DNA of 64,000 nt from Octopus bimaculoides (taxonomy: Eukaryota). The translations under genes and the position numbers were made by a program. Below, piece by piece: positions 27,858 to 27,923 of this stretch; position 1 is the stretch's first letter, and the number at the start of each line of letters is the position of its first letter. Under the pieces are notes generated by a model. The model searched no databases. It saw only the letters and a list, made by a program, of their open reading frames with translations, and was not told where the DNA came from. Where the stretch lies: assembly GCF_001194135.2 (NCBI RefSeq), contig NC_069002.1, positions 23,405,996-23,469,995 on the forward strand. Reading direction: 5' to 3'.

Positions 27858-27923
27858 AATGATGAACAAGCTTAATTGATTTTCGAACCTTATTGGGTTC
27901 TCATCAGAGGCATCTACACCATT
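27858..27923 (-). ncRNA. Type I hammerhead ribozyme motif (intact catalytic core, degenerate stem Ia)
   Basis: Minus strand reads AAUGG UGUA G AUGCCU CUGAUGA GAACC CAAUAA GGUUC GAAA AUCAAU UA AGCUUG UUCA UCAUU. This gives core CUGAUGA (27907-27901), a perfect 5-bp stem II closed by G-C, GAAA (27884-27881), a short stem III and a UUA cleavage triplet. Confidence 0.7.

What the first reader, a model, noticed from the sequence alone, without database searches (positions are those of the whole stretch)
27858..27923. Type I hammerhead ribozyme with intact core and Schistosoma-like tertiary-contact layout
Seen: the minus strand has CUGAUGA, stem II GAACC/GGUUC with loop CAAUAA, GAAA, a short stem III, and U-A at 27874-27873 (predicted cut between 27873 and 27872). 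It also has UGUA 8-11 nt 5' of the core, and UUCA plus UCAUU (pairing with AAUGG) on the 3' side. Established: the S. mansoni Sm-alpha hammerhead has this arrangement (UGUA/UCCA internal loop in stem I, CAAAUA loop II), and metazoan type I hammerheads with short or palindromic stem III cleave as dimers in retrozyme and satellite repeats. Inference: stem III AAUCAAUU is one CpG-type change from the palindrome AAUCGAUU. Stem Ia pairs poorly (AUGCCU/AGCUUG), so this copy may be decayed. It sits alone in ~170 bp of unique sequence between two retroposons and could represent a cephalopod retrozyme family or an intronic ribozyme.
Basis: partly seen in the sequence, partly recalled or inferred. Interest (0 to 1): 0.85.

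Follow-up and report, generated by a model that had tools for sequence, protein, structure and literature searches.

The report
Solitary, partly decayed hammerhead ribozyme copy
This is a genuine copy of the self-cutting "hammerhead" RNA motif that rides on small retroelements in many animal genomes, but it stands alone and one of its three stems is damaged, so it is most likely an ordinary molecular fossil.

Summary
All core bases are intact. It has a 5-bp stem II, loop CAAUAA, an 8-nt near-palindromic stem III, and A17, with the predicted cut at 27873|27872.

It is not a chance match. The core, stem II top and loop II module is expected about 3.5e-4 times per 2.7-Gb genome of this composition. 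The same pattern finds 83 metagenome loci, mostly canonical type I hammerheads with covarying helices. The candidate also has their invariant U1.7, U2.9 and A2.8, and a distal helix I in the canonical register.

Rfam fails (12.5 bits, no gathering-level hit). But Rfam also misses an intact natural hammerhead with the same stem II, so that failure says little.

Helix Ia is defective: 2 Watson-Crick pairs, a bulged C, a C·U mismatch, two G·U wobbles and one A-U. G2.7 is not seen in 35 natural copies. Stem III is one change from a palindrome. There is no second copy, tandem unit or PLE gene in the window. The flanking SINE copies are 10-16% diverged from their in-window consensus.

Best reading: an old solitary relic of a canonical metazoan type I hammerhead of the retrozyme/Sm-alpha kind, probably weak or inactive. 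It is a new member of a known kind, of low interest. I could not search any genome of this lineage, so family membership and activity remain untested.

The parts
27917..27925 (-). Distal helix I (Ib), 5' strand AGAAUGGUG
   Evidence: Pairs with 27856-27864 (9 bp, 2 of them G·U) in the MFE fold and in the CM alignment.
27914..27916 (-). Loop 1, 5' side: U2.9 A2.8 G2.7 (tertiary-contact positions)
   Evidence: In 35 natural copies U2.9 is 32/35 and A2.8 is 27/35. Position 2.7 is C or U in 33/35 and G in 0/35.
27908..27913 (-). Helix Ia, 5' strand AUGCCU (2.6-2.1)
   Evidence: Pairs imperfectly with 27866-27872.
27901..27907 (-). Core box C3-A9, CUGAUGA
   Evidence: Exact match.
27885..27900 (-). 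Stem II GAACC/GGUUC (G10.1-C11.1 present) with loop II CAAUAA
   Evidence: The stem is identical to natural hammerhead L052. The loop is the commonest natural variant, 45/80.
27882..27884 (-). Core G12 A13 A14
   Evidence: Exact match.
27874..27881 (-). Helix III, AAUCAAUU: A15.1-U16.1, A-U, loop UCAA. 8 nt, as in canonical ACAGCUGU, and one change from a palindrome
   Evidence: All 35 natural canonical copies in A1 (chosen for this span) have an 8-nt helix III, mostly palindromic. One-off variants such as ACAACUGU occur 5/35.
27873..27873 (-). A17. Predicted cleavage is 3' of this base (27873|27872)
   Evidence: Follows from hammerhead numbering. H17=A is allowed but rare, 1/35 in the natural set. 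Cleavage was not tested.
27866..27872 (-). Helix Ia, 3' strand AG(C)UUGU: A1.1, G1.2, bulged C27870, then U, U, G, U
   Evidence: The CM alignment gives U-A, C-G, a bulged C, C·U, G·U, U·G and A-U. In the straight register only 3 of 6 positions pair.
27865..27865 (-). U1.7 (loop 1, 3' side)
   Evidence: Invariant, 35/35, in natural canonical copies.
27856..27864 (-). Distal helix I (Ib), 3' strand CAUCAUUUU
27798..27976 (-). 179-nt stretch with no other copy in the window. It carries the hammerhead at the tip of a long imperfect hairpin
   Evidence: Self-BLAST. Fold -43.9 kcal/mol, z = -2.0. Bounded by SINE-like repeats at 27797 and below and at 27977 and above, the latter with a (GAT)n tail.

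Best explanation
The sequence is a real hammerhead by descent. It is a solitary copy of the canonical metazoan type I hammerhead, the kind carried by Sm-alpha-like and non-LTR 'retrozyme' retroelements. It lies in old sequence that was later flanked by SINE insertions.

If the minus strand is transcribed, the RNA could form the three-way junction: helix I 27925-27908 / 27872-27856, stem II 27900-27885, and helix III 27881-27874. Loop II (CAAUAA) would dock on the helix I internal loop (U2.9, A2.8 / U1.7). The 2'-OH of A27873 would attack its 3' phosphate, leaving a 2',3'-cyclic phosphate and a 5'-OH on A27872.

Four things stand against good activity:
- Helix Ia next to the cut has only two Watson-Crick pairs before a bulge and a mismatch.
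- Position 2.7 is a G, which no natural copy shows.
- Helix III is a weak A-U/A-U stem whose palindrome is broken.
- There is no second copy to form the dimeric helix III.

This copy is therefore most likely slow or inactive: a neutral fossil noticed because its core happened to survive.

Shown: the motif, that it is not a chance match, its canonical architecture and its solitary state in the window. Inferred: descent from a retroelement, its age, and loss of activity.
For: - All core positions are exact, and G10.1-C11.1 is present.
- The module CUGAUGAG-N(1-2)-CC-CAAWWA-GG-N(1-2)-CGAAA is expected 3.5e-4 times per 2.7 Gb at this window's composition. It hits 5 times in 596 Gb of prokaryote genomes.
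- It hits 83 metagenome loci. About two thirds of the distinct instances parse as canonical type I hammerheads, with helix I paired at 5 or more of 6 positions in 48 of 71.
- In an alignment of 35 such copies, the helices covary. 87.7% of cells are paired, against 25-35% when partners are slid. 13 of 17 pairs change on both sides.
- The candidate shares their U1.7 (35/35), U2.9 (32/35), A2.8 (27/35), 8-nt helix III, the G2.10-C1.8 start of the distal helix, and the commonest loop II.
- A covariance model built from those 35 copies scores the candidate 28.4 bits, E about 1e-6, as the best hit in the window.
- Natural copy L052 has the identical stem II GAACC/GGUUC, H17=A and an A/U-rich palindromic helix III.
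- For decay: helix Ia has a bulge, a mismatch and 2 wobbles. The candidate scores 11.5 bits below L052, and about 30-60 bits below canonical 4-bp-stem copies (50-87 bits).
- About 6 of some 50 natural copies with an intact core also have helix I paired at 4 or fewer of 6 positions, so such relics are common.
- The flanking SINE copies are 10-16% from their in-window consensus, so the interrupted sequence is at least that old.
- No second copy, tandem unit or partner hammerhead exists in 64 kb.
Against: - Activity was not measured, and nearest-neighbour folding cannot judge it. Natural active-type copies show the same gap between the hammerhead fold and the MFE (median 6.3 kcal/mol, against 7.8-8.9 here).
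- With C27870 bulged, 5 of 6 helix Ia positions still pair. A strong 9-bp distal helix clamps helix I. A 2-bp helix I occurs in Drosophila virilis PLE hammerheads (PMC4209133). So residual or even useful activity is possible.
- If the region really is 10-16% diverged, neutral survival of about 29 critical bases, including a CpG in a genome with CpG o/e 0.29, is only a 0.6-5% event. Ascertainment explains this, but so would selection.
- The pattern and the covariance model were designed after seeing the candidate. The chance estimate already includes the relaxations I introduced.
- The source genome could not be searched, so 'solitary' holds only for this window.
Confidence: 0.6

Rival explanations
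1. It is a working ribozyme. Either it is a member of a low-copy, still-mobile small (about 180 nt) retrozyme family, or it is a domesticated (for example intronic) hammerhead that cleaves its host transcript. In this reading the bulged helix Ia is a tolerated variant clamped by the 9-bp distal helix.
For: - The core, stem II, loop II and tertiary-contact bases are all intact, including a CpG, although the neighbouring SINEs are 10-16% diverged.
- 5 of 6 helix Ia positions pair in the bulged register, and the distal helix has 9 bp.
- The whole 179-nt stretch folds as a rod with the hammerhead at its tip, z = -2.0. That size matches the low end of animal retrozymes, about 170-400 nt (PMC7229834).
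- A 2-bp stem plus tetraloop helix III is described as typical of invertebrate hammerheads, and most invertebrate retrozyme hammerheads are reported to self-cleave efficiently (PMC7229834).
Against: - There is no second copy or tandem arrangement in 64 kb.
- G2.7 is seen in 0 of 35 natural copies.
- There is a bulge and a mismatch two pairs from the scissile bond, and the helix III palindrome is broken.
- Survival of the intact core is explained by ascertainment.
- No conservation or expression data could be obtained.
Confidence: 0.27
2. It is a chance look-alike. An A/T-rich genome with GAUGA-type microsatellites threw up CUGAUGA...GAAA around a hairpin by accident.
For: - No Rfam hit at gathering level. 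The best is Hammerhead_HH9 at 12.5 bits against a cutoff of 52, E = 1-3.3 for under 300 nt.
- Generic cores arise at about 0.025 per window, which is hundreds per Gb-scale genome.
- Helix Ia in the straight register (3 of 6) is at the random level.
- The fold z-score of the 81-nt motif is only -1.3.
Against: - The specific canonical module is expected 3.5e-4 times per 2.7-Gb genome. In real DNA it is essentially confined to true hammerheads.
- On top of that come U1.7, U2.9, A2.8, an 8-nt near-palindromic helix III, and a 9-bp distal helix in the canonical register.
- Rfam also misses the intact natural hammerhead L052, and natural copies score only 33-41 bits against a cutoff of 34.
Confidence: 0.04
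3. It is the minimal hammerhead of a Penelope-like element (PLE) pseudo-LTR, left behind by a truncated PLE.
For: - Single scattered hammerheads are typical of truncated PLEs (PMC4209133).
- PLEs and animal retrozymes are proposed to be related (bioRxiv 10.64898/2026.07.22.740005).
- The copy abuts a (GAT)n microsatellite, and PLEs show a microsatellite insertion bias (PMC8557442).
Against: - PLE min-hammerheads lack helix III and the loop-loop contacts. They have a 7-8-bp helix II and an extra base between positions 9 and 10.1. The candidate has none of these and is of the canonical type.
- No RT with GIY-YIG ORF lies nearby. The only RT fragments are about 32 kb away and are non-LTR-like (zf-RVT).
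Confidence: 0.05

Closest known systems
Schistosoma mansoni Sm-alpha (Sm1) type I hammerhead (crystal construct and N79 derivative)
   Same: Same topology and same core. G10.1-C11.1 is present and stem II is closed by CC/GG. Loop II is 6 nt, CAAxxA. G-U-A sits at 2.10-2.8 and U..CA at 1.7-1.10. A distal helix lies beyond an internal loop (sequences from PMC3245953 and PMC12550524).
   Different: Stem II is 5 bp rather than 4. The loop is CAAUAA rather than CAAAUA. Position 2.7 is G rather than C. Helix Ia is defective rather than 5-6 clean pairs. H17 is A rather than C. It is a single copy, not a high-copy SINE-like satellite.
Canonical type I hammerheads of animal non-LTR retrozymes (Cervera & de la Pena 2020, PMC7229834; 35 metagenome copies aligned here as A1)
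   Same: Helix I 6 positions, 3x1 internal loop with U2.9/R2.8 and U1.7, loop II CAAUAA, 8-nt helix III, low-GC context.
   Different: Natural units sit in tandem repeats of about 170-400 bp and have a paired helix Ia (92% of cells in A1). Here there is no repeat, and helix Ia has a bulge, a mismatch and two wobbles. Helix III is A/U-only and non-palindromic.
Metagenome hammerhead L052 (Ga0308020_1014241, 11-75 +)
   Same: Identical CUGAUGA-GAACC-CAAxAA-GGUUC-GAAA module (26 of 27 nt). H17=A. A/U-rich 8-nt helix III (AUAGCUAU).
   Different: L052 has 5 of 6 clean helix I pairs and a perfect palindrome. No similarity exists outside the 27-nt module, so it is not a close relative. It scores 39.9 bits against 28.4 on model R1.
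Rfam Hammerhead_HH9 (RF02275) / Hammerhead_1 (RF00163)
   Same: HH9 is the best Rfam match. Its consensus shares the core, the CAAAAA-type loop II and the UAC/U loop 1.
   Different: 12.5 bits against a cutoff of 52. Hammerhead_1 did no better than HH9's 12.5 bits, because only the best match in the clan is listed (cutoff 34). HH9 is defined by conservation in amniote introns, which could not be examined here.
Rfam Hammerhead_1 hits in the giant squid genome (235 loci; PMC6962438)
   Same: This shows that type I hammerheads are already annotated in a cephalopod genome.
   Different: Those loci pass the Rfam cutoff. This one does not. The window's taxon was not confirmed.

Membership tests
Hammerhead ribozyme (type I) | Conserved core C3 U4 G5 A6 N7 G8 A9 ... 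G12 A13 A14, A15.1-U16.1, H17 not G | tested here: met
   CUGAUGA 27907-27901, GAA 27884-27882, A27881-U27874, A27873.
Hammerhead ribozyme (type I) | Helix II with a G10.1-C11.1 pair | tested here: met
   5 bp, GAACC/GGUUC. The same stem occurs in natural copy L052.
Hammerhead ribozyme (type I) | Helix III closing A15.1-U16.1 (in animals 1-2 bp with a small palindromic loop) | tested here: met
   A-U, A-U and loop UCAA, with an 8-nt span as in canonical ACAGCUGU. The palindrome is broken at one position.
Hammerhead ribozyme (type I) | Open-ended helix I of about 6 bp flanking the cleavage site | tested here: inconclusive
   Straight register: 3 of 6 pairs. With C27870 bulged: 3 Watson-Crick pairs, 2 G·U and 1 mismatch, followed by a 9-bp distal helix.
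Hammerhead ribozyme (type I) | Loop 1 / loop 2 tertiary-contact nucleotides | tested here: met
   U1.7 (35/35 natural), U2.9 (32/35), A2.8 (27/35) and loop II CAAUAA (45/80) are all present. G2.7 is atypical, 0/35.
Hammerhead ribozyme (type I) | Score at or above the Rfam gathering cutoff (RF00163 34 bits, RF02275 52 bits) | tested here: not met
   No gathering-level hit. HH9 scores 12.5 bits. The test is weak here: natural copies score 33-41 bits, and L052 is not found at all.
Hammerhead ribozyme (type I) | Site-specific self-cleavage | not testable with these tools
   Needs in vitro transcription or end-mapped RNA reads.
Hammerhead ribozyme (type I) | Homologous copies with compensatory changes | not testable with these tools
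   No genome of this lineage is in any searchable collection.
Animal non-LTR retrozyme | Tandem repeats of about 170-400 bp, each with a type I hammerhead | tested here: not met
   27798-27976 is unique in the window. Model R1 finds no second canonical hammerhead.
Animal non-LTR retrozyme | Expression as linear and circular RNAs of unit length | not testable with these tools
   No transcript data are available.
PLE minimal hammerhead | No helix III or loop contacts, long helix II (7-8 bp), extra base between 9 and 10.1, location in the pLTR of an RT/GIY-YIG element | tested here: not met
   The candidate has helix III, the contact bases, a 5-bp helix II and no extra base. No PLE ORF is nearby.
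Conserved intronic hammerhead (HH9/HH10 type) | Position in an intron and conservation across species | not testable with these tools
   No exons were recognised in the window. No orthologous sequence could be reached.

The most novel reading that the evidence does not exclude
The hammerhead is kept by selection. It could be a domesticated intronic or lncRNA ribozyme, or the founder of a very small (about 180 nt) circRNA-forming retrozyme family in this (possibly cephalopod) lineage. In that case it works with an unusual helix I, made of two pairs, a bulge and wobbles, clamped by a long distal helix.
Probability: 0.1. Interest if true: 0.55.

Novelty: new member of a known kind. Interest (0 to 1): 0.25.

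Why it matters
It matters little in itself. Canonical type I hammerheads occur by the hundreds to hundreds of thousands in animal genomes, and they are already annotated in a cephalopod. One solitary, damaged copy adds a data point.

Two by-products are more useful. First, Rfam's hammerhead models miss or barely reach genuine canonical copies, so genome counts based on gathering cutoffs underestimate this family. Second, a short literature-derived module pattern is almost perfectly specific for true hammerheads across terabase collections.

If the copy proved active or conserved, it would be a rare example of a tolerated bulge next to the cleavage site. It would also be a possible domesticated ribozyme outside vertebrates.

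Tried and rejected
- Rfam at gathering level over the whole window found nothing. In E-value mode on the locus it found only HH9 at 12.5 bits. I do not treat this as refuting, after the calibration on natural copies.
- Thermodynamic test: the hammerhead fold is 7.8-8.9 kcal/mol above the MFE. I rejected this as evidence, because natural copies show the same gap (median 6.3, 90th percentile 12.2).
- An alternative register with U27874 as H17 gives 4 of 6 Watson-Crick pairs in helix I. I rejected it because it loses U1.7, the 8-nt helix III and the canonical register.
- Protein-word searches with the ORF that spans the motif found nothing, either with 48 aa or with the full 98 aa including the SINE part.
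- An RT fragment was used to reach eukaryotic contigs. The nearest contig shares only the transposon, not the SINEs, so no related genome was obtained.
- BLAST of the 179-nt unit against all 83 fetched loci matched only the 27-nt module of L052.
- A candidate-specific pattern scan of prokaryote genomes gave 0 hits. The general pattern gave 5 hits there and 1 in IMG/VR.
- A literature search for the flanking SINE sequence, to name the organism, found no papers. The 'cephalopod' attribution therefore stays unverified.
- The second covariance-model hit, at 40727-40789, was examined. I judged it to be driven by a DNA palindrome.

Full report
**Observation**

I read 27700-28100 on the minus strand and verified each segment by coordinate:
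- Core box CUGAUGA, 27907-27901.
- Stem II GAACC/GGUUC with loop CAAUAA, 27900-27885.
- G12 A13 A14, 27884-27882.
- Helix III AAUCAAUU, 27881-27874: A15.1-U16.1, A-U, loop UCAA.
- A17 at 27873. The predicted cut is 27873|27872.
- UGUA at 27918-27915.
- UUCA at 27866-27863.
- A distal helix, AGAAUGGUG 27925-27917 with CAUCAUUUU 27864-27856.

Self-BLAST shows that 27798-27976 (179 nt) has no other copy in the window. It lies between SINE-like repeats at 27252-27797 and 27977-28175, the latter ending in (GAT)n.

**Is it chance?**

A loose core is not rare. I defined it as CUGANGA, a stem of at least 4 bp, a loop of at most 8 nt, then GAAA. In 400 first-order Markov simulations of the window it appears 0.025 times per window-equivalent, and 0.015 times when a helix III is also required. 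That is hundreds per Gb-scale genome.

The candidate carries much more than the loose core. I took the S. mansoni hammerhead from the literature. The crystal construct, rebuilt from its primers, reads GGAUGUACUACCAG-CUGAUGA-GUCC-CAAAUA-GGAC-GAAACGCC (PMC3245953). The N79 cassette is given in PMC12550524.

From these I wrote the module pattern CTGATGAG-N{1,2}-CC-CAAWWA-GG-N{1,2}-CGAAA. It was relaxed only as far as needed to include the candidate.
- Under the window's own dinucleotide model (CpG o/e 0.29) this pattern is expected 7e-9 times per window and 3.5e-4 times per 2.7 Gb.
- In real DNA it occurs 5 times in 596 Gb of prokaryote genomes and once in IMG/VR.
- It occurs in 83 metagenome loci.

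**The metagenome matches**

About two thirds of the distinct matches parse as canonical type I hammerheads: helix I is paired at 5 or more of 6 positions in 48 of 71. Thirty-five distinct canonical copies align without gaps (A1).

Their helices covary. 87.7% of cells are paired, against 25-35% when the partners are slid. Thirteen of 17 pairs change on both sides.

Outside the pattern these copies have:
- U1.7 in 35/35, U2.9 in 32/35, A2.8 in 27/35, and a pyrimidine at 2.7 in 33/35.
- An 8-nt helix III by selection, mostly the palindrome ACAGCUGU. One-off variants such as ACAACUGU occur 5/35.

Among 80 distinct pattern matches, loop II is CAAUAA in 45.

The candidate has U1.7, U2.9 and A2.8, an 8-nt helix III one change from a palindrome, the commonest loop II, and G2.10-C1.8 opening the distal helix.

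A covariance model built from A1 (R1) places the candidate first in the window, at 28.4 bits and E about 1e-6. Its alignment bulges C27870. Helix Ia then reads U-A, C-G, (C), C·U, G·U, U·G, A-U, and U1.7 and the distal helix fall in the canonical register.

I conclude that the sequence descends from a canonical hammerhead. Chance gets about 4%.

**Why Rfam fails**

Rfam gives no gathering-level hit in the window. Its best match is HH9 at 12.5 bits.

I calibrated this on natural copies:
- They score only 33-41 bits on RF00163, whose cutoff is 34.
- A perfect copy, L017, is best matched by HH9 at 35.7 bits, against a cutoff of 52.
- L052 is an intact natural hammerhead with the same GAACC/GGUUC stem II as the candidate. 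It gets no hit at E of 1 or below.

So the negative Rfam result carries little weight here.

**State of the copy**

On model R1:
- Canonical 4-bp-stem copies score 50-87 bits, including copies with a degraded helix I.
- L052 scores 39.9 bits.
- Matches that fit only the module score about 28-30 bits with no stem II insertion, and 20.7 bits with a one-sided insertion.

The candidate's 28.4 bits includes the cost of two stem II insertions. I estimate roughly that its flanks add about 8 bits. It remains 11.5 bits below L052.

Its defects are:
- Only two Watson-Crick pairs next to the cut, followed by a bulge and a C·U mismatch.
- G at 2.7, which no natural copy has (0/35).
- A helix III of two A-U pairs with a non-palindromic loop.
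- No partner copy for a dimeric helix III.

Folding energies do not help. The hammerhead fold is 7.8-8.9 kcal/mol above the MFE, but natural copies show a median gap of 6.3 and a 90th percentile of 12.2.

Relics with an intact core and a degraded helix I are common among natural copies, about 6 in 50.

**Context and age**

The window is an A/T-rich (32% GC), CpG-depleted draft eukaryotic assembly. It has 8,142 N, many microsatellites and many SINE copies.

The two SINE copies that bound the 179-nt stretch end at their own termini. They are 10% and 16% from small in-window consensuses. The simplest history is that they inserted into older sequence that already held the hammerhead.

At that divergence, neutral survival of the roughly 29 critical bases is a 0.6-5% event. 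Ascertainment explains this, because only intact cores get noticed. Selection cannot be excluded.

The 179 nt fold into one long imperfect hairpin with the hammerhead at its tip, z = -2.0. The size is at the low end of animal retrozymes, about 170-400 nt (PMC7229834).

There is no tandem unit, no second canonical hammerhead and no PLE gene in the window.

**What could not be done**

No genome of this lineage was within reach.
- ORFs spanning the motif and the SINE have no relatives in the protein collection.
- An RT fragment reaches only 67-85%-identical transposon copies in other eukaryotes.
- The 179-nt unit matches nothing in the fetched loci beyond L052's 27-nt module.

**Comparison and verdict**

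It works like the canonical metazoan type I hammerhead of Sm-alpha and non-LTR retrozymes, and by sequence it belongs with them.
- It is not the PLE minimal type.
- Membership in a retrozyme fails the tandem-repeat test within this window.
- Type I hammerheads are widespread in animals. 235 Rfam hits are already reported for the giant squid genome (PMC6962438).

It is a new member of a known kind, most likely a fossil (0.6). There is a real but minor chance that it is still active or selected (about 0.27, of which about 0.1 for a truly functional, domesticated or founder role). Interest: 0.25.

Noticed in passing
window 40727-40789 (-), within 40681-40837: A second hammerhead-like motif, AUGAUGA-14 nt-GAAA-UUGCAAU-A. 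It scores 19.8 bits on R1, E about 8e-4. It lies exactly in the 33-nt spacer of a 62-nt, 94% inverted repeat. It has A instead of C3 and an A·G at 10.1/11.1, and its 'helix I' is a perfect DNA-level palindrome. It is probably a foldback or MITE loop that flatters the model, not a ribozyme.
   Followed up: partly
window 40265-40404 and 40812-40950: A larger inverted duplication (140 nt, 90% identity) encloses the palindrome above. This looks like a nested foldback structure.
   Followed up: no
loci L017, L031, L041, L052 and others (metagenome contigs): Rfam under-detects canonical type I hammerheads. Natural copies score 33-41 bits on RF00163 (cutoff 34). L052, an intact copy, gets no Rfam hit at E of 1 or below. 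Genome counts based on gathering cutoffs will be underestimates.
   Followed up: yes
L052 1-1730 (Ga0308020_1014241): A natural hammerhead with the same GAACC/GGUUC stem II as the candidate. It sits about 100 nt from the end of a 470-aa reverse-transcriptase-like ORF on the opposite strand (180-1592).
   Followed up: partly
L049, L051, L082; L018; L021: Metagenome contigs carry two or three pattern matches in tandem, at spacings of about 360-540 nt. That is the arrangement expected of retrozyme arrays.
   Followed up: no
whole window: CpG observed/expected is 0.29, GC is 32%, and 8,142 N lie in gaps that are mostly flanked by TA/CA microsatellites. This is a methylated, repeat-rich draft eukaryotic genome. 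The taxon was not confirmed by any tool.
   Followed up: partly
window 27252-27797; 27977-28175; copies near 3-306, 4670-5339, 8404-8577, 18838-19195, 25125-25307, 35980-36149, 37157-37547, 45594-45783, 47539-47736, 57349-57697: Two SINE-like families are present in five or more copies each, 9-21% from in-window consensuses. One ends in a (GAT)n tail. 27740-27797 is an inverted partial copy of the other.
   Followed up: partly
window 60389-61196 (-): Fragments of a non-LTR retrotransposon ORF (zf-RVT, E = 4.5e-5). The relatives found are 41-85% identical ORFs on contigs of up to several Mb in ENA assemblies. None comes from a genome that shares this window's SINEs.
   Followed up: partly
window 56911-56978 (+): A weak R1 hit (12.5 bits) inside a SINE-like segment that contains GACCCAAAAAGGAUGAAA but has no CUGAUGA box. 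I judged it a chance resemblance.
   Followed up: partly
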